From: Octopus bimaculoides
Lineage: Eukaryota
Assembly: GCF_001194135.2 (NCBI RefSeq)
Contig: NC_068986.1
Coordinates: 1,798,988 to 1,832,392, forward strand
Length of the DNA: 33,405 bases
Direction: 5' to 3'
Shown here: one piece after another, positions 799 through 30,730 of the stretch
Layout of the letters: every line of letters begins with the position of its first letter
Position numbering within the stretch: position 1 is the first letter of the stretch
Position numbers and translations under genes: made by a program
Notes under the pieces: generated by a model
What the model saw: the letters and a program-made list of their open reading frames with translations, nothing else
What the model was told of the DNA's origin: nothing
The model's database searches: none

Positions 799-1008
799 NN
801 NNNNNNNNNNNNNNNNNNNNNNNNNNNNNNNNNNNNNNNNNNNNNNNNNNNNNNNNNNNNNNNNNNNNNNNNNNNNNNNNNNNNNNNNNNNNNNNNNNNN
901 NNNNNNNNNNNNNNNNNNNNNNNNNNNNNNNNNNNNNNNNNNNNNNNNNNNNNNNNNNNNNNNNNNNNNNNNNNNNNNNNATATATATATATATATACAT
1001 ACATATAT

Positions 1009-3100: not shown

Positions 3101-3364
3101 ACTAGAACGTTCCTCCGTTAACTCGGCCTTGTTGAAGTTACACACCTTTGTATTTCTGAATTTTGGTTTTGTAATAATCTAACAAGTGACTAAATGTCTA
3201 CAATGTCTTTTGTATAATGTACTTGCTTCAGTTTCAGAACTTTTGGTTGGAATTAACAAATACCATGTGATTCTCAGATATAGCGCCGATAGAAGCAGAC
3301 AAGTTAGTAGTGATTCGCAGACTTTTTACAATAACTTTCTGGGTGTTTTTCTCTTTCTAGCCGT

Positions 3365-3373
3365 CTCTCTTCT

Positions 3374-3450
<77 letters not shown>
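3365..3450. repeat. (CT)n microsatellite
   Basis: Direct. Confidence 0.97.
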
Positions 3451-3938: not shown

Positions 3939-4569
3939 CACTGATTATAATTGGGAATGGTGATATCTCAAAGGTTAAATTGCAATCTTTATCGACTCAT
4001 TGTTAGAAGTGGCTTAAAGGTTCCGCTTTCGTAAGTCGCTACACAAATATATTCCTGCTTTCAATTTGCATGCCAACCTGTACCATCAAAAGAATAAGAA
4101 CGGGTGACTTAGGTTATCAACCTTAACCGGATGTTTTAAGTTGACATTCAGCTTATGCTTCATAGAAAGGAATATGAAAAGTGTTCCATTTACGAAAGGA
4201 AAGCAGAACCTCCAGACTGAATGAAGAAGACGAAGAAGACCTCTATTGTTTAATCAGGAGAAAGAAGAATGCGCCCATAACTTTCCCAGGTTATTGAGAT
4301 TGATGTGGTTGATCTTCAGTTTGAAATTCTCTAACTTAATGTCTCCTGGAAAACGCGGATGCTCCGAAAGGGAAGGATTACGCGAAATGGTTTGCGAAGG
4401 ACTTTTAGACATTTTTATTTATTGTTATATTGCAATTGAACAATAGTGTGGGACGGTTCAGAATTCCAACAGACCAATCTGATTTAAGCTTTTGTTTGTT
4501 TGTTTTCGAAATTCCTTGTTAATATAATTGCACACTAATTGATTGTGTATCTTCAGAGAGATTTTAAAT

Positions 4570-4788
4570 GTTGGTCTCAAATTTTAGCACAAAGTCAGTA
4601 ATATCTGGAAGGGGGTAAGTCGATTACATCGACCCCAGTGTTCAACTGGTACTTATTTTATCGACCCTGAAAGGTTGAAAGGCAAAGTCGACTTCAGCGA
4701 AATTTGAACTCAGAACGTAAGGACGGACGAAATGCCGCTAAGCATTTTGCCCGGCGCTGTAACGATTCTGCCAGCTCGCCGCTTTGAG
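4570..4788 (-). mobile_element. tRNA-derived SINE, family 2, full length
   Basis: Minus strand reads GCGGCGAGCTGGCAGAATCGTTA (A-box-like)...GAGTTCAAATT (B-box-like)...ATAAGTACCAG...CTGGGGTCGAT. Perfect 15-bp TSD AGAGAGATTTTAAAT at 4555-4569 and 4789-4803. Confidence 0.9.
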
Positions 4789-5844: not shown

Positions 5845-5987
5845 TACATACATAAATACATACGTACATACATACATACGTACATACATATGTTTCTGTC
5901 TCCCAAATTCACTCGTATGGCAGTGGTTAATCCGAGGGTATTGTAGAAGACACTGGCCCAAAGTGTCGTGCACTGGGCCTGAACTGT
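5595..5987 (-). mobile_element. tRNA-derived SINE, family 1, with internal (CA)n/(TACA)n expansion; extreme 5' end missing
   Basis: Colinear with 6462-6872 and 14551-14910. (TAAAAGA)-like tail at ~5595-5615. Confidence 0.88.
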
Positions 5988-6248
5988 GAGATATTAATTC
6001 CTAATTCATTGAAATTACCCCCCCCCCTTTAGGAAGCGTCGTTAATAATTGTCACTAAGTTTTATATTTTCTTTCTCCAACGAAGACAGAAATTTCATTG
6101 AATTAAGCTTTTTGTGAGCGGCAATCAGTTCTACACTCTTTAGTTTATTCACATTTCGACTCCTTTAGACCAATATATTCATATTAATGACAATAAAAGA
6201 TATTTAATTGGTGAAAATTTTCTATAAGCTTTTATAATATTCAGTTAT

Positions 6249-6446
6249 GGTAAGGCGGCGAGCTGGCAGAGTGGTTAGCACGCCGGGCGAAATGCTTAGC
6301 GGTATTTCGTCTGTCTTTACGCCGAGGTCGACTTTGCCTTTCATCCTTTCGAGGTCGATAAATTACGTACCAGTTGCGTACTGGGATCGATCTAATCGAT
6401 TAGCCCCTCCCCCAAAATTTCGGACCTTTTTCCTAGAGTAGAAAAG
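6249..6446 (+). mobile_element. SINE family 2 with B-box deleted
   Basis: 13-bp TSD AATATTCAGTTAT at 6236-6248 and 6447-6459. Lacks the TTCTGAGTTCAAATT segment present in 4570-4788. Confidence 0.9.
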
Positions 6447-6461
6447 AATATTCAGTTATAG

Positions 6462-10647: not shown

Positions 10648-10730
10648 GCTATGATAGTAGAAGACATTTACCAAAGGTGCCATGCAGTGGGACTGAACTC
10701 AGAACCATCTGGTTGAGAAGCAAAAACTTT
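10648..10730 (-). mobile_element. SINE family 1 head fragment
   Basis: CTATGATAGTAGAAGACATTTACCAAAGGTGCCATGCAGTGGGACTGAACTCAGAACCA matches the heads of the 12933-13103 and 14551-14910 copies. Confidence 0.8.
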
Positions 10731-12932: not shown

Positions 12933-13103
12933 ACAACGTGCTTCCACGCAGTTTCCGTCTATAAATTCATTTACAAGGCATTGTGTCGGTCCGTCCAGAG
13001 CTATAGTAGAAGACACTTGCCCAAGATATTGCGCAGTGGGACTTAACCCGAAACCACGTGACTGCAAAGCGAGTTTCTTAAACACACGGTTATACCTGCG
13101 TCT
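12933..13103 (-). mobile_element. SINE family 1 5' half
   Basis: GCTATAGTAGAAGACACTTGCCCAAG...GCAGTGGGACTTAACCCGAAACCACGTG, with (TG)/(CA) tract at 12860-12932 on its 3' side. Confidence 0.85.
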
Positions 13104-15154: not shown

Positions 15155-16123
15155 NNNNNNNNNNNNNNNNNNNNNNNNNNNNNNNNNNNNNNNNNNNNNN
15201 NNNNNNNNNNNNNNNNNNNNNNNNNNNNNNNNNNNNNNNNNNNNNNNNNNNNNNNNNNNNNNNNNNNNNNNNNNNNNNNNNNNNNNNNNNNNNNNNNNNN
15301 NNNNNNNNNNNNNNNNNNNNNNNNNNNNNNNNNNNNNNNNNNNNNNNNNNNNNNNNNNNNNNNNNNNNNNNNNNNNNNNNNNNNNNNNNNNNNNNNNNNN
15401 NNNNNNNNNNNNNNNNNNNNNNNNNNNNNNNNNNNNNNNNNNNNNNNNNNNNNNNNNNNNNNNNNNNNNNNNNNNNNNNNNNNNNNNNNNNNNNNNNNNN
15501 NNNNNNNNNNNNNNNNNNNNNNNNNNNNNNNNNNNNNNNNNNNNNNNNNNNNNNNNNNNNNNNNNNNNNNNNNNNNNNNNNNNNNNNNNNNNNNNNNNNN
15601 NNNNNNNNNNNNNNNNNNNNNNNNNNNNNNNNNNNNNNNNNNNNNNNNNNNNNNNNNNNNNNNNNNNNNNNNNNNNNNNNNNNNNNNNNNNNNNNNNNNN
15701 NNNNNNNNNNNNNNNNNNNNNNNNNNNNNNNNNNNNNNNNNNNNNNNNNNNNNNNNNNNNNNNNNNNNNNNNNNNNNNNNNNNNNNNNNNNNNNNNNNNN
15801 NNNNNNNNNNNNNNNNNNNNNNNNNNNNNNNNNNNNNNNNNNNNNNNNNNNNNNNNNNNNNNNNNNNNNNNNNNNNNNNNNNNNNNNNNNNNNNNNNNNN
15901 NNNNNNNNNNNNNNNNNNNNNNNNNNNNNNNNNNNNNNNNNNNNNNNNNNNNNNNNNNNNNNNNNNNNNNNNNNNNNNNNNNNNNNNNNNNNNNNNNNNN
16001 NNNNNNNNNNNNNNNNNNNNNNNNNNNNNNNNNNNNNNNNNNNNNNNNNNNNNNNNNNNNNNNNNNNNNNNNNNNNNNNNNNNNNNNNNNNNNNNNNNNN
16101 NNNNNNNNNNNNNNNNNNNNNNN
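15155..16123. other. Assembly gap (N run)
   Basis: 969 N. Confidence 1.
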
Positions 16124-16665: not shown

Positions 16666-16755
16666 GACTACATAATTGCCTGTTTTCTTCTTTCAGAATT
16701 TGAAACCTCGTGTACATGTCAAAAAAACATTAATGTCATTCTATTCACGTCTTAA

Positions 16756-16891
16756 ATGCTTTATAGAAATTAATGATGTTTTATAAGTATCTAAGGTACT
16801 TTATAGGAATCTAAGATGCTTAATAGAAATTTATGATTCTTTTTAGGAACATAAGATGCTTTATAGGACTCAAAGATGCTTTATAGGAATC
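16756..16891. repeat. Degenerate 20-bp minisatellite, ~6.8 copies (consensus ATGCTTTATAGGAATCTAAG)
   Basis: Units start at 16756, 16776, 16796, 16816, 16836, 16856 and 16876. Confidence 0.9.
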
Positions 16892-17352
16892 AGTCCCAGT
16901 TCTAGTGTGTCATTCTATTGACCCCCTGGAAGATAAAAGCAAAACTATTAAAGCTTTGACAAGATTTGGACTCAAGCAACAATTTATTTACCTTACGTCA
17001 CTAATGCTCTTGAGAATGTCCCACCATCTCCTTTTCCCGCCACTAAAAGTACAAATATGTATAATAGTATGTTTTTATACCGTTGAACTGTTTTAACCGT
17101 TCATCCACGTAGATCATAACGAGATTCCTCAGATTTTGCTGTTTAAGTATGAGACCTCGAGTGTTTATTACAAATCGAAACATTAAAAACCAAAATTTCT
17201 AAATTTATGGTCAAGTGCGAGGCAAGTTCTTGTAGAAAATGTGTTATTGATTCAGTCGATCATAGTATGTTATTGGTATTTTATTTATTGATTCCAGAGG
17301 AATAAGCAATAACATCGATCCCGTATGGGGTTTGGACTTAGAATCTAGAAGG

Positions 17353-19630: not shown

Positions 19631-20379
19631 CTGGGGTTTGTTTTAGTTTGCAAAGACAATCTTTGATATGAGAAAAGCTGTTGCTGTTCCACTGATGATA
19701 ATCTTCGATGATCTTAACACAAACCTGGACTAAGAAGTATTTATGAAAGATAACAACGTCGTATACACCTCGGTTGATATTCTGTCCGTGGGATTAAGAT
19801 TCAGGCAGAATACGATGGAGAAACTGTACCTAAAAATAATATTTTGACAATCTTTCGAACTAGGTACATAAAATGGATGAGCACAAAGGGAAAGAATGTG
19901 AGTAAAAGAAAAGTATTATCGTTCATAATCGGCAATGTAATTAGAGGGGAATATACCTGATTTAACTATATCTGTATTTAAATTTTTGAAGGAAAATTAC
20001 TAGACTGGATGTTAATGAGAAATACTTATTTGTGAGTTTTTTGTTAAAATCTCTGAAATAAAATAGAATATTTATATAGAGTAATAAGCAATTAATGCAT
20101 TTACTGAATGACATCAATGCATTATTACGGTGACGAAAAGAAATGTCACCGTAATAATCATCCGATGATTGTTGAAAAACGGCAGCTCTCTTTTGGTACT
20201 AATAAAAAAAAATATGCTAGTAAAAGCGTTTTCTAAGAAAATAAGGTGTAACTAATTAAATAATAAATATAAGAGAAAAATAGAAATTTCCGTTTTTGCT
20301 TTTAGTATCACAAATAGCATTTTTTAGCGTCCAGTTTGTACAATGTTTCTTAATACTGTGAATATAGTGAAACTATTTC

Positions 20380-20382
<3 letters not shown>

Positions 20383-20468
<86 letters not shown>
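20383..20468. repeat. (TG)n microsatellite
   Basis: Direct. Confidence 0.98.
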
Positions 20469-20473
<5 letters not shown>

Positions 20474-20876
20474 GTTTCAATGTCTTTTGTTTATTTGTTT
20501 TCTAAAATCAAATTATCGTCGTCATTTACCTTGTTTGTCAAACTGAAAACTTGGATTTTTAAGTTTGCATAAAGCGGGGTTATAAGTAGATCCAAGATCC
20601 ACGTATTAAATTAATTAGTTTTTACTTCATTATCATTGAAAGTATTTACATTTACATTTACTAGAGGTTGTTCTTTTGCGACTGCGTTTTACTTACTCCC
20701 AGGCCATAAAAAATATTTTAAAAACTCTTTTGTTTTAATTATAGGATGCATACACGCACATATTTATTTTTTCAGAGCTTGGATGTCTTTATTGTAAATG
20801 ATTTTGTTTTGTAATTTTAGTTTATTGTTGCCGTTTATCTTTTCTAAACAGATATAACAGAAAAAGCCCTTACATC

Positions 20877-21888
20877 ATGGCAAGTACAAGGAGCGATAGA
20901 AACAATGGACAAAAAGATTTGAGTGGCAATCGGAAACGAGCACTTGTCAAGGCTAAGGCAACTGAGAAAGAACAACGAAGAGGTACTATAACGAAATTTC
21001 TTGTCACTCCAGTTTTGAAGCGACAACGTATTGAGGATAAAGAAAATAAGAACAATTTGTTTTAAATGAGATACTCAAACATATAAAAGCAGCTAAATAC
21101 TACGCCATAATTTTAGACAGCATATCTGATATGGGTCGCCAAGAGCAAATGTCTCTAACGGTCAGGTATGTGTGTCTGATGGTCACTTGGCTCCACCAGG
21201 TGTTTATGAACATTTCATAAAGTTTATGAAAGCTGAAAGCAGCACAGGAGATTTATATTATACATTATTAAATTCACTGAAGGAATTAAATTTAGACGTG
21301 AAAGACATTCGAGGCCAAGGCTGTGACAACGGTTGTAACATGCTGGTCATATCTCTGGAGTAGAAGCCAGGCTGTTGAAGGATAATTCAAGAGCTTTGTT
21401 TGAGGCTCCACCGTTAGTCACGATGGTCTATTAAAAATTGAAAGCTCACATGACAGTTTTGATGCTTTATTACAAGTCAAGATAATCACTGACATATTGT
21501 TTGTGAAGAGGTCTTCTAAAACCAGTCTTTTCTGGTCTTTTTATCTGAGAAGTCTTTCAAAATCATTTCAAGATCAAAGTTTTTTGCAATGTCATTGAAA
21601 GACTTCTCAGATAAAAAAAAAAAAAAGACCAGAAAGGACTGTTTTTAGAAGACCTCTTCACAAACAATATGTCAGTGATTATCTTGACTTGTAATAAAGC
21701 ATTAAAACTTTCATATGAGCTTTCAATTTTTAATATACCATTGTGACTAATGGTGGAGCCTCAAGCCATCGACGCTTGAGACGGGCATACTACACCAAGC
21801 ATAAAACATCAATCTTCAGCTTTTGTAGAATAGAGGGCTCCACTAGCAATTCTCTAATTTAGCACCGCACTTCATAGCGCCGGCCCTG
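20877..21888 (+). mobile_element. Internally deleted and rearranged hAT transposon (Tip100/ZMYM1-like); left TIR not found
   Basis: MASTRSD...LSGNRKR...TITKFL N-terminus; LNEILKHIKAAKYYAIILDSISDMGRQEQMSLTVRYV; VYEHFIKF...DIRGQGCDNGCNM/GHISGVEARLLKDNSRALF. Right TIR GCGCCGGCCCTG ends at 21888. Confidence 0.88.
21400..21764. repeat. Long inverted repeat: arms 21400-21560 and 21595-21764, 34-nt spacer
   Basis: Manual alignment: 8 substitutions plus one A-run indel (5 vs 14 nt), with 60 bp of uninterrupted identity at 21462-21521. Confidence 0.97.
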
Positions 21889-22771
21889 TCTGGAAGTACT
21901 AATAAAAATTATATTTAGTTGATGAAATCTAATTAGACTGAAACATGCACTCAATACTGTGCTGTCAAATATCACATCCGCTTTCTACTACATTCTATTT
22001 TTAATACAATTTCATTTAAATTTCAGGATTGCCACTCCTGTCTCTTTTTTTTTTTTCTTTCTTAACCACAATTAATCATACGGTTAACTTTTTTTCTCTT
22101 GACTACAAATGTAATTTTGAATAATCAAAATGCCCTAATTCTCGCCATAAAATAAATTAGCGTTGACTTTACTATAAATTTTGCAGTAATTTGGTTGTTT
22201 GCACTAGCATAGCTGTATGAAATGCCTGCAACAAGTGTAAAACAGCAAAACGGAGTCTTGCATGATGGTGCACTATTTTCAATTTGTATTGTGATATATC
22301 GAGAGCAAGCTGTGTCACTTTATGTTTATAGTTTAAGATATTGCCGGTTATGTACTGCAGTTTTCTAATGTAGTGGTGTGCGAAACTGGTTCTTCCAATT
22401 CTATTGAAATCATAATTCTTCCAGTGGTGCACTCTCTTTGCTTTAATAGTACACTGCAAATTATGCCAAATATGTCAAAGACATTACTTTGCAATTCCCA
22501 GTTTGTGCTATAGAAATATAATTTAGGAAGACTATTGATTAACAGCGGGTTTCCGATGTGGACAGATTGCGCTACGTGACTGCAACATCCTGTAAACTTA
22601 GGCTATTTCTGCTACATCTAATGGTCTCATTTGCAAAGATGTATATTTAATGTTTATTCAGACAGAATAAAATGATCTATTTGTAATGGATGATTTAATA
22701 GACAAATCCGTTTTAAGAATTACCATACGAGTTTATACTTATAACATGGATTAACAGATATATTTAACATT

Positions 22772-26221: not shown

Positions 26222-26289
26222 ATACTAGCTTCCATACATACTAGCTTCCATACATACTAGCTTCCATACATACTAGCTTCCATACATAC
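26222..26289. repeat. Perfect 16-bp tandem repeat ATACTAGCTTCCATAC x4.25
   Basis: Identical units start at 26222, 26238, 26254 and 26270. Confidence 0.97.
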
Positions 26290-26371
26290 CTTCTTGAGAC
26301 TGAAGTTATGAGTTGCTATAAAATATGAAGCGCTCAGTTTTAAACTGACTCAACTGGTTAAGAGACTCCAG

Positions 26372-27888: not shown

Positions 27889-28237
27889 NNNNNNNNNNNN
27901 NNNNNNNNNNNNNNNNNNNNNNNNNNNNNNNNNNNNNNNNNNNNNNNNNNNNNNNNNNNNNNNNNNNNNNNNNNNNNNNNNNNNNNNNNNNNNNNNNNNN
28001 NNNNNNNNNNNNNNNNNNNNNNNNNNNNNNNNNNNNNNNNNNNNNNNNNNNNNNNNNNNNNNNNNNNNNNNNNNNNNNNNNNNNNNNNNNNNNNNNNNNN
28101 NNNNNNNNNNNNNNNNNNNNNNNNNNNNNNNNNNNNNNNNNNNNNNNNNNNNNNNNNNNNNNNNNNNNNNNNNNNNNNNNNNNNNNNNNNNNNNNNNNNN
28201 NNNNNNNNNNNNNNNNNNNNNNNNNNNNNNNNNNNNN
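27889..28237. other. Assembly gap (N run)
   Basis: 349 N. Confidence 1.
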
Positions 28238-29070: not shown

Positions 29071-29230
29071 AGGCTTCCACACAATTTCCATTTACCAAAT
29101 TTCACTCACAAGGCACTCATCTACCCGCGACTTTTGTAGAAGACATTTTCCCAACGTGTCATTCAGTAAGATCGAACCAGAAACCAAATGGTCGTGAAGT
29201 GAACGCTTTAACCACACAGCTATATCTGTG
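29071..29230 (-). mobile_element. Diverged SINE family 1 5' half
   Basis: GGCTTCCACACAATTTCC...ACTCACAAGGCA...GTAGAAGACA...GAAACCA...TTAACCACACAGC. Confidence 0.8.
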
Positions 29231-30494: not shown

Positions 30495-30730
30495 ATTACA
30501 CACACATACACACACACACATACAAACATACGTATATACATATATGCCTATATATATATNNNNNNNNNNNNNNNNNNNNNNNNNNNNNNNATATATATAC
30601 ATACGTATATGCGCATAGACATGTATGTATGTCTGCACGTGTGTCTACATATATTTGTAATTATATATGTATGTATGCATGTATGTATGTATGTATGTAT
30701 GTATGTATGTATGGATGGATGGATGGATGG
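30495..30730. repeat. Compound CA/TA/TATG/TGGA microsatellite with gap at 30560-30590
   Basis: Direct. 31 N. Confidence 0.95.

What the first reader, a model, noticed from the sequence alone, without database searches (positions are those of the whole stretch)
21400..21888. Fold-back hAT derivative: a potential hairpin-RNA 'transposon killer' locus or ADAR substrate
Seen: the + strand transposase breaks off at ...DNSRALF (21399), just before the expected CxxH motif. It is followed by a 161-bp arm, a 34-nt spacer and a 170-bp inverted arm (8 substitutions, 60 bp perfect), then the right TIR. Read on the minus strand, spacer plus left arm give NDIAKNFDLEMILKDFSDKKTRKDWF*, which resembles the hAT C-terminal dimerisation-domain end. 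So the structure is RC(spacer+arm) followed by arm: the element's middle was replaced by an inverted copy of its own 3' end, with TT microhomology at both junctions. Established: inverted-duplication derivatives can make hairpin RNA that silences the parent family in trans (maize Mu killer), and long dsRNA is an ADAR substrate, with A-to-I editing abundant in coleoids. Inference: transcription from the retained transposase 5' region or host read-through would give a ~160-bp duplex against this hAT family.
Basis: partly seen in the sequence, partly recalled or inferred. Interest (0 to 1): 0.75.

Follow-up and report, generated by a model that had tools for sequence, protein, structure and literature searches.

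The report
Fold-back rearranged dead hAT transposon
A decayed, immobile copy of a hAT DNA transposon had its middle replaced by a 197-bp backwards copy of its own tail, most likely an ordinary DNA-repair scar; it would form a long RNA hairpin if transcribed, but no use of that hairpin could be tested here.

Summary
Arms 21400-21560 and 21595-21764 are inverted copies (8 substitutions, one 9-nt A-run indel, a 60-bp perfect run) around a 34-nt spacer. As RNA they fold at -265 kcal/mol (z = -37).

Three fuller relatives from other public assemblies (L001-L003) have TIRs starting CAGGGYYGG (one end of L003 is decayed), 8-bp target-site duplications and DUF4371 plus hAT-dimerisation domains. Each carries this 3' region once, in direct orientation. 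The fold-back is therefore derived in the window copy.

A 197-bp inverted copy of the element's own 3' end (21400-21596) replaces about 1.1 kb. Its junctions show TTG and TT microhomology. The copy is also a wreck:
- about 100 bp at the left end, including the left TIR, is missing;
- a second internal deletion of about 0.9 kb lies at 21057/21058;
- the reading frame has frameshifts and stops, and a (GT)n run is inserted.

Best explanation: a microhomology-mediated template-switch repair scar in a dead hAT element, a known kind of event.

Only one quarter of the duplex is coding sequence. No intact close relative was found. A survey reports that molluscs lack a dedicated endo-siRNA pathway, which matters if the host is a cephalopod. 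Passive ADAR editing, if the locus is transcribed, is plausible but generic. Interest is low.

The parts
20318..21057 (+). 5' part of the hAT copy: 5' UTR-like region plus the first 62 codons. The left roughly 100 bp, including the left TIR, is absent. Homology to relatives begins at about 20318.
   Evidence: BLAST and alignment to L002 5700-6292 and L003 5549-6234 at 79-81%. The left TIR motif CAGGGYYGG is not found upstream.
20384..20474 (.). (GT)n microsatellite that interrupts the 5' region of the element and is absent from the relatives.
   Evidence: Alignment to L002 and L003 shows a gap in both relatives at this point. Repeat families D3 and D4 cover it.
20877..21065 (+). Remnant N-terminal ORF (62 aa). 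Its ATG corresponds to the family's start codon. Its end runs across the internal deletion junction at 21057/21058.
   Evidence: It is 48% identical over 33 aa to the ORF at L001 8715-8852. Deletion junction.
21058..21399 (+). Fragment of the DUF4371 / RNase-H-like transposase core. It needs two frameshifts to read and breaks off at ...DNSRALF, just before the (V/I)PCxCH motif of the relatives.
   Evidence: Pfam DUF4371, E = 4.5e-4, below the curated cut-off. Relatives P0001-P0006 are 68-81% identical and carry PF14291 and PF27073. DNA is 86-88% identical to L002 7202-7543 and L003 7088-7433.
21401..21403 (.). Junction A: TTG microhomology shared by the transposase parent (...CTTTG|TACC) and the reverse-complemented 3'-region parent (GGC|TTGAGG).
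   Evidence: Alignment A3. BLAST segments overlap at 21400-21402.
21400..21596 (-). Inverted 'filler' copy of the element's own 3' region (left arm 21400-21560 plus spacer 21561-21594 plus the 2-bp junction TT). On the minus strand it encodes the last 26 codons of the transposase (21596-21519), the stop codon (21518-21516) and about 116 nt of 3' UTR.
   Evidence: Reverse-strand match to L002 12830-12636 (83%) and L003 8741-8573. Translation and BLASTP to the L001 C-terminus.
21561..21594 (-). The 34-nt hairpin loop (spacer). It holds C-terminal codons present only in the inverted copy.
21595..21764 (+). Right arm: the native 3' end in direct orientation. It holds the last 13 codons with a 9-nt in-frame A-run expansion (KDFSDKKKKKTRKDCF, stop codon at 21646-21648), then 3' UTR including AATAAA at 21693-21698.
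   Evidence: Direct match to L002 12659-12961.
21765..21888 (+). Unduplicated subterminal region and the right terminal inverted repeat (the element ends ...CCGGCCCTG at 21888).
   Evidence: Alignment to the right ends of L001, L002 and L003, each followed by an 8-bp target-site duplication.
21889..21896 (.). TCTGGAAG, the expected right copy of the 8-bp target-site duplication. No partner is found upstream, which fits loss of the left end.
   Evidence: the only other occurrences are at 4604 and 9801.

Best explanation
This is a dead, non-autonomous relic of a DUF4371-type (TTF zinc-finger / ZMYM1-like) hAT DNA transposon. About 1.1 kb of its interior, running from just before the CxxH motif to 13 codons before the stop, was replaced by a 197-bp inverted copy of its own 3' end.

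The most likely origin is one error-prone repair event. This could be abortive gap repair (synthesis-dependent strand annealing) after excision, or repair of a break or stalled fork inside the element. In that event the growing 3' end switched template twice at tiny microhomologies. It first annealed through TTG onto the opposite strand of the 3' region, copied 197 nt back towards the interior, and then rejoined the native 3' end through TT.

Shown here: the anatomy, the derived state relative to three relatives, the microhomologies, and the decay of the copy. Inferred: the repair pathway, and that the arms were identical at birth and have since drifted apart by about 5%.

The locus has no demonstrated function. 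If an RNA polymerase crosses it on either strand, the RNA will fold into a duplex of about 160 bp with 8 mismatches and a 9-nt bulge. The duplex would be about 125 bp if a + strand transcript ends at the native AATAAA (21693-21698). In an animal such a duplex would be expected to be hyper-edited by ADAR as a passive by-product.
For: - Inverted repeat geometry and its significance.
- Family identity. The stitched fragment hits DUF4371. Relatives P0001-P0006 carry PF14291 and PF27073. The L001 copy carries DUF4371, FAM200-ZBED5 RNase-like and Dimer_Tnp_hAT ORFs in order. Full-length relatives of 822-856 aa have DUF4371 plus Dimer_Tnp_hAT and are named 'TTF-type domain-containing protein'.
- Element limits in relatives. 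TIRs begin CAGGGYYGG (the right end of L003 is decayed), with 8-bp duplications: CATCTGCC in L002, GTGCTATG in L003 and TTTGTGAT in L001.
- Derived state. All three relatives have the 3' region once, in direct orientation, with no long inverted repeat there.
- The inverted segment stops 131 bp short of the terminus, so it has no TIR or target-site duplication of its own. Both junctions lie at microhomologies. A survey of metazoan TIR elements found a median of 2 bp of microhomology at template-switch fillers (PMC8277862).
- Decay of the copy: left TIR absent, a deletion of about 0.9 kb at 21057/58, frameshifts and stops, and a (GT)n insertion.
- The two arms share about 11 derived states against L002 and L003, so they are each other's closest relatives.
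- Nothing else points to a function: no Rfam family and no Pfam domain in ten of the longer neighbouring ORFs tested.
Against: - No read data could be examined, so transcription, small RNAs and editing are simply unknown. 'Inert' is a default, not a result.
- The arms differ by 5%, and 6 of the 7 polarisable differences are derived in the inverted copy. That would also fit copying from a different family member, or a nested second insertion. The asymmetry falls to 4:3 if the two CpG(left)/TpG(right) sites are parallel CpG decay, and 6:1 is not significant anyway (binomial p = 0.125).
- The copy number of this junction in the host genome is unknown, because the host genome is not in any searchable collection. 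An amplified fold-back subfamily cannot be excluded.
Confidence: 0.72

Rival explanations
1. Passive ADAR substrate. The locus lies in a transcribed region (an intron, or read-through), and its RNA hairpin is hyper-edited A-to-I like other inverted-repeat pairs, with no specific function. This is compatible with the best explanation for its origin.
For: The predicted duplex is long and nearly perfect. Most hyper-editing in metazoans occurs in such structures formed by neighbouring inverted repeats, and Octopus bimaculoides has one of the strongest signals (PMC5625713).
Against: No gene was recognised in the window: ORFs of 90 aa or more are mostly low-complexity, and the ten ORFs tested have no Pfam hits. 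The host organism was not verified.
Confidence: 0.25
2. Mu-killer-like trans-silencer. Transcription through the fold-back gives a hairpin RNA that is processed into small RNAs, which repress active members of this hAT family.
For: The structure is analogous to maize Mu killer (PMC3440606). It is also analogous to the Ac/Ds composite insertions whose inverted duplications are transcribed into dsRNA and siRNAs that silence Ac, itself a hAT element (bioRxiv 10.1101/2020.01.07.897926). The arms keep a 60-bp perfect run.
Against: The duplex covers only the last 13 codons plus 3' UTR. The longest exact match to the nearest relatives is 21 nt. The close relatives found are all decayed, and the nearest full-length proteins are about 50% identical. 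The element's left end is missing. Mismatches and a 9-nt bulge have accumulated, as expected without constraint. Molluscs are reported to lack a dedicated endo-siRNA pathway (PMC12479628), which applies only if the host is a mollusc. No expression data are available.
Confidence: 0.05
3. Nested insertion plus deletions. A second copy of the same family inserted in inverted orientation into the first, as in maize 'double Ds', and two later deletions trimmed it to 197 bp.
For: The arms differ by 5%, and most polarisable differences sit in the inverted copy. That would follow naturally if the arms came from two different copies.
Against: The inverted segment has neither a TIR nor a target-site duplication, and it ends 131 bp short of the terminus. 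This model needs three events (an insertion and two deletions) whose end points happen to give an inverted copy of exactly the sequence next to it. The arms share about 11 derived states against L002 and L003.
Confidence: 0.08
4. Assembly or library artefact, such as a fold-back chimeric read or a mis-join of two copies.
For: The window is a gapped draft scaffold with four N runs. Palindromic chimeras are a known artefact of some libraries (my own knowledge).
Against: Chimeric fold-back reads give identical arms, whereas here there are 8 substitutions and an indel. A graph mis-join would switch inside shared sequence. Here both junctions are novel sequences with only 2-3 bp of microhomology and must exist in reads. 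No N run lies within 5 kb of the structure.
Confidence: 0.03

Closest known systems
Internally deleted DNA transposons with templated 'filler' DNA from abortive gap repair or template switching (maize Ds from Ac, Drosophila P-element derivatives, metazoan single-copy Pack-TIRs; PMC8277862)
   Same: It is an internal deletion of a TIR element. The missing part is replaced by a short templated copy of nearby sequence. The junctions have 2-3 bp of microhomology, and the native terminus is kept.
   Different: The filler is an inverted copy of the element's own adjacent 3' end rather than foreign or direct sequence, so it makes a long near-perfect hairpin. The repair pathway is inferred, not observed.
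Maize Ac/Ds composite insertions with inverted duplications that trigger siRNA silencing (bioRxiv 10.1101/2020.01.07.897926)
   Same: It belongs to the hAT superfamily and has an inverted duplication of part of the element that could be transcribed into dsRNA.
   Different: The maize cases arise by alternative transposition with re-replication, span TIRs and much more of the element, and have demonstrated dsRNA, siRNAs and heritable silencing. Here the inverted piece has no TIR and nothing is shown about RNA. The host is an animal, reportedly of a clade without a dedicated siRNA pathway if it is a mollusc.
Maize Mu killer (PMC3440606)
   Same: It is a partial inverted duplication of an autonomous element's transposase gene that could form a hairpin RNA by read-through.
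   Different: [quoted passage not shown] The arms here are 161-170 bp, mostly 3' UTR, in a different superfamily, with no functional data.
Inverted-repeat ADAR substrates and palindromic transposons, such as the hyper-edited palindromic Harbinger repeat of Xenopus and inverted SINE pairs (PMC5625713)
   Same: It is a long intramolecular duplex made of transposon sequence, the typical target of hyper-editing.
   Different: As far as could be tested, it is a single rearranged locus rather than a repeat family that is palindromic by design. Editing was not examined.
Drosophila hpRNA loci that give endo-siRNAs (PMC10317233)
   Same: It is a genomic inverted repeat with a short loop that is derived from the sequence it could target.
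   Different: The Drosophila loci are defined by Dicer-2-dependent siRNAs and known targets. Neither is available here.

Membership tests
hAT superfamily DNA transposon (DUF4371 / TTF-type, ZMYM1-like branch) | Transposase with an RNase-H-like core (DUF4371 / FAM200-ZBED5 RNase-like) and a C-terminal hAT dimerisation domain | tested here: met
   The window fragment hits DUF4371 weakly (E = 4.5e-4, below the curated cut-off) and is 68-81% identical to P0001-P0006, which carry PF14291 and PF27073. The syntenic ORFs in L001 carry PF14291, PF27073 and PF05699. The window's minus-strand peptide aligns to the end of the PF05699-bearing ORF. The window copy itself keeps only fragments.
hAT superfamily DNA transposon (DUF4371 / TTF-type, ZMYM1-like branch) | Short terminal inverted repeats and an 8-bp target-site duplication | tested here: inconclusive
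   Met in relatives L001-L003: TIRs begin CAGGGYYGG (the right end of L003 is decayed), with perfect 8-bp duplications. In the window only the right TIR (ending at 21888) is present. The left TIR and the left copy of TCTGGAAG are missing.
Mu-killer-type / hairpin-RNA transposon silencer | Inverted duplication of part of an autonomous element | tested here: met
Mu-killer-type / hairpin-RNA transposon silencer | The inverted duplication is transcribed into a hairpin RNA | not testable with these tools
Mu-killer-type / hairpin-RNA transposon silencer | Small RNAs arise from both arms | not testable with these tools
   Same reason. Background: molluscs are reported to lack a dedicated endo-siRNA pathway (PMC12479628); the host was not verified.
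Mu-killer-type / hairpin-RNA transposon silencer | Active family members exist and are repressed in trans | tested here: inconclusive
   There is no second family copy in the window. All close relatives retrieved are fragmented. The nearest full-length proteins are about 50% identical. The host genome itself could not be searched.
Template-switch / abortive gap-repair deletion derivative | Internal deletion with a native terminus kept, and the missing part replaced by templated filler | tested here: met
   Map against L003 element coordinates: 106-791, a gap, 1645-1990, then RC(3130-3298), then about 3165-3428.
Template-switch / abortive gap-repair deletion derivative | Microhomology at the filler junctions | tested here: met
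   TTG at junction A and TT at junction B. Such short matches have little statistical weight on their own.
ADAR hyper-editing substrate | Long near-perfect intramolecular dsRNA | tested here: met
   Predicted only: -265 kcal/mol, z = -37.
ADAR hyper-editing substrate | Clustered A-to-G mismatches in RNA reads | not testable with these tools

The most novel reading that the evidence does not exclude
The fold-back is transcribed, from the remnant 5' region or by read-through, and its hairpin feeds a small-RNA pathway that represses living members of this hAT family. The small RNAs could be Dicer products loaded into a miRNA-type Argonaute, or piRNA precursors. This would be an animal counterpart of maize Mu killer or the Ac composite insertions, in a lineage said to lack canonical endo-siRNAs.
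Probability: 0.04. Interest if true: 0.75.

Novelty: new member of a known kind. Interest (0 to 1): 0.22.

Why it matters
As it stands, this is a clean textbook example of how DNA-repair template switching reshapes a dying DNA transposon and, by accident, creates a long hairpin-forming locus. Such accidents are the raw material from which hairpin-RNA silencers (Mu killer, Ac composite insertions, Drosophila hpRNAs) and ADAR hyper-editing targets arise.

It would matter only if RNA data showed processing into small RNAs that act on live copies of the family. That would be notable in a mollusc, where no dedicated siRNA pathway has been reported. Without such data it is an ordinary relic.

Tried and rejected
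- **Read mapping.** I therefore did no RNA-seq, small-RNA or long-read mapping, and I did not try read laying or any way round the closure.
- **An independent copy of the locus.** Eight exact ORF sequences from the element and its flank are not in the 15-billion-protein collection.
- **Junction copy number.** The exact junction-B string was searched in metagenome contigs and the junction-A string in prokaryote genome contigs. Both gave 0 hits. This is uninformative, because neither collection holds the host genome.
- **The N-terminal 62-aa ORF** as a handle on copies sharing the 21057/58 deletion gave no homologue.
- **The left end.** A hypermutated left TIR in 20222-20318 was considered. The differences from relatives are not transition-biased and identity is about 52% in AT-rich DNA, so I read it as non-homologous and the element as truncated.
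- **Error-prone synthesis.** I considered this as the source of the excess of derived, AT-to-GC changes in the inverted copy. The 6:1 split is not significant (p = 0.125) and becomes 4:3 if the two CpG/TpG sites are parallel CpG decay. I left it as an unexplained minor point.
- **Known RNA family at the hairpin:** none.
- **Host gene context.** ORFs of 90 aa or more are mostly low-complexity, and ten tested ORFs have no Pfam hits. I could not say whether the locus is intronic.
- **Host organism.** It was not identified.
- **The third homologous-protein search** was not spent on the short junction-spanning ORFs, because the host genome is evidently not in that collection.

Full report

Yes. The gapless repeat finder reports arms 21400-21542 and 21622-21764 at 94% complementarity. 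A gapped local alignment extends them to 21400-21560 (161 bp) and 21595-21764 (170 bp). There are 8 substitutions, one 9-nt difference in an A/T run, a 60-bp perfect run and a 34-nt spacer at 21561-21594.

It is the longest local inverted repeat in the 33-kb window that is not made of microsatellite or N runs. Folded as RNA, 21380-21790 gives one continuous hairpin of -265.4 kcal/mol. Dinucleotide shuffles give -84.1 +/- 4.9 (z = -37; 0 of 100 shuffles as good).

**2. What element is this?**

The + strand pieces between 21066 and 21399, stitched across two frameshifts, hit Pfam DUF4371 weakly (E = 4.5e-4, below the curated cut-off). They find six proteins from two ENA assemblies at 68-81% identity, all carrying PF14291 and some PF27073.

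The contigs encoding three of these proteins were fetched as L001, L002 and L003. Each holds a fuller copy of the family:
- The ends begin CAGGGYYGG (the right end of L003 has decayed to TAGGCCTGG).
- Each is bounded by a perfect 8-bp target-site duplication: TTTGTGAT, CATCTGCC and GTGCTATG.
- In L001 the ORFs carry, in order, DUF4371, the FAM200-ZBED5 RNase-like domain and Dimer_Tnp_hAT.

An exhaustive HMMER search with P0001 finds 6057 representative clusters. The nearest full-length proteins (822-856 aa) are about 50% identical. They have DUF4371 plus Dimer_Tnp_hAT, and one source names them 'TTF-type domain-containing protein'. The family is therefore a hAT transposon of the DUF4371 / TTF-zinc-finger (ZMYM1-like) branch, about 3.4 kb long when complete (L001 and L003).

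**3. Anatomy of the window copy**

Coordinates below are those of the L003 element.

| L003 element | Window | Note |
|---|---|---|
| 1 to about 100 | absent | Holds the left TIR. Window homology begins near 20318. No left TIR motif or second copy of the presumed target duplication TCTGGAAG lies upstream. |
| 106-157 | 20326-20377 | |
| (none) | 20384-20474 | (GT)n run, absent from relatives |
| 201-791 | 20483-21057 | Includes the family's start codon at 20877 |
| 792-1644 | deleted | Blunt junction at 21057/21058 |
| 1645-1990 | 21058-21402 | Transposase core, ending ...LLKDNSRALF. Relatives continue with (V/I)PCxCH. |
| 3298-3130, reverse complement | 21400-21596 | Inverted copy |
| about 3165-3428 | 21597-21888 | Direct orientation, through the right TIR |

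Read on the minus strand, 21596-21519 gives NDIAKNFDLEMILKDFSDKKTRKDWF followed by a stop. This is 54% identical to the last 26 residues of the L001 ORF that carries the hAT dimerisation domain.

The right arm keeps only the last 13 of these codons. Its A run is expanded in frame by 9 nt (KDFSDKKKKKTRKDCF, then a stop at 21646-21648). The 3' UTR follows, including AATAAA at 21693-21698. About one quarter of each arm is therefore coding sequence and three quarters is 3' UTR.

**4. The fold-back is derived, and how it probably arose**

L001, L002 and L003 carry the 3' region once, in direct orientation. They have no inverted self-match longer than 15 nt there. The window has no second copy of the family.

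The inverted segment is bounded by two novel junctions:
- **Junction A.** The transposase parent reads ...AGAGCTTTcTTTG|TACC. The reverse-complemented 3' parent reads GGC|TTGAGGCTCC. The window reads AGAGCTTTGTTTGAGGCTCC. The three bases TTG (21401-21403) could come from either parent.
- **Junction B.** The inverted parent would continue ...GCAATGTCATT|TTCC. The direct parent reads ...GATTTT|GAAAGAC. The window reads GCAATGTCATTGAAAGAC, so TT is shared.

The inverted piece ends 131 bp short of the terminus. It has no TIR and no target duplication, so it did not arrive by transposition.

One repair event with two microhomology-primed template switches explains all of this. It could have been abortive gap repair after excision, or repair of a break or stalled fork inside the element. 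Templated fillers with a median of 2 bp of microhomology are documented for TIR elements across 100 animal genomes (PMC8277862). Abortive gap repair as the origin of Ds from Ac is established knowledge (cited from memory, not re-read here). The pathway is my inference. The anatomy is shown.

**5. Divergence of the arms**

Both arms share about 11 states that differ from L002 and L003, so they are sister sequences.

I polarised the 8 differences with L002 and L003 as outgroups. Six look derived in the inverted copy, one in the right arm, and one is ambiguous. Two of the six are CpG in the left arm against TpG in the right arm and the relatives. If these reflect parallel CpG decay, the split is 4:3. 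Even 6:1 is not significant (binomial p = 0.125).

About 5% divergence plus a bulge-forming indel is what neutral drift after an old duplication would give. Nothing suggests that the duplex is being maintained. An alternative is that the inverted copy was templated from another family member, or is the remnant of a nested second insertion. This cannot be excluded without the host's subfamily consensus, but it needs more events.

**6. An artefact?**

Unlikely. Fold-back chimeric reads give identical arms, and a mis-join in an assembly graph switches inside shared sequence. Here the arms differ at 8 sites and one indel, both junctions are unique sequences, and the nearest N run is more than 5 kb away. 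Confirmation with long reads is still the proper test, and I could not run it.

**7. Function**

No RNA-seq, small-RNA or long-read data could be laid on the locus, and I did not try to get round the closure.

What bears on the 'killer' reading indirectly:
- (a) The left roughly 100 bp of the element is missing, so whether the remaining 5' region can still drive transcription is unknown.
- (b) No gene was recognised around it, so read-through cannot be assumed.
- (c) The duplex targets only the extreme 3' end of the family's mRNA. The longest exact match to the closest relatives found is 21 nt.
- (d) Every close relative retrieved is itself broken into short ORFs, and the nearest intact proteins are about 50% identical. 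No live target is in evidence, although the host genome itself could not be searched.
Its authors suggested that RNA editing may handle long dsRNA instead (PMC12479628).

For the ADAR reading: most hyper-editing in metazoans falls in long, near-perfect duplexes formed by neighbouring inverted repeats, and octopus is among the most heavily hyper-edited species (PMC5625713). If any transcript crosses 21400-21764 it should be edited. That is a generic property of such duplexes, not a specific function. A + strand transcript ending at the native poly(A) signal would still pair over about 125 bp (inference).

**8. Comparison with known systems**

Structurally the locus belongs with internally deleted DNA transposons that carry templated filler. 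In potential it resembles two maize cases. One is Mu killer (PMC3440606). The other, closer because Ac is a hAT element, is the set of Ac/Ds composite insertions whose inverted duplications are transcribed into dsRNA and siRNAs that silence Ac (bioRxiv 10.1101/2020.01.07.897926).

It meets only the first defining feature of that class, the inverted duplication. Transcription and small RNAs were not testable, and the evidence on live targets was inconclusive. I therefore do not file it as a silencer. No Rfam family matches.

**9. Verdict**

The functional reading is an untested speculation with a low prior. The locus is a new instance of a known kind of rearrangement. Interest is low unless RNA data show otherwise.

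Noticed in passing
window 20384-20474: A (GT)n microsatellite of about 90 bp sits inside the 5' region of the hAT copy. Relatives L002 and L003 have about 40 bp of unrelated sequence at that point, so the repeat arose or expanded after insertion.
   Followed up: partly
window 20100-20320: The hAT copy lacks its left roughly 100 bp. The AT-rich DNA that replaces it contains a perfect 14-bp palindrome pair (20121-20134 / 20145-20158). What truncated the element was not determined.
   Followed up: partly
window 21413-21528 versus 21636-21751: At 6 of the 8 sites where the arms differ, the inverted (left) copy has G or C where the right arm and the relatives have A or T. Two of these sites are CpG in the left arm against TpG elsewhere. 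The asymmetry is not significant and may be parallel CpG decay, but it is unexplained.
   Followed up: partly
window 799-980, 15155-16123, 27889-28237, 30560-30590: Four N runs (1531 N in total), each next to AT/GT/CA microsatellites. The window is a gapped draft scaffold, 36% G+C and very rich in di- and tetranucleotide repeats.
   Followed up: no
window 5943-6016, 10657-10730, 13006-13079, 29136-29209; also 4615, 5666, 10231, 14608, 23876, 31918: Dispersed short repeat families (74-nt and 35-nt cores, 61-89% identical) that look like SINE-type elements. One pair is inverted (4567-4702 / 6317-6452; 136 nt, 74% complementary), so the hAT fold-back is not the only potential dsRNA former nearby.
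   Followed up: no
window 26222-26301 and 16716-16911: Two minisatellites: a 16-nt unit (ATACTAGCTTCCATAC) repeated about 5 times, and a 20-nt unit repeated about 9 times.
   Followed up: no
L002 7544-12635: The L002 relative has about 5.1 kb between the transposase core and the 3' end, where L001 and L003 have about 1.1 kb. This is probably a nested insertion of about 4 kb. It was not examined.
   Followed up: no
window 21693-21698: The family's canonical AATAAA lies inside the right arm. A + strand transcript that uses it would still include about 125 nt of the duplex.
   Followed up: no
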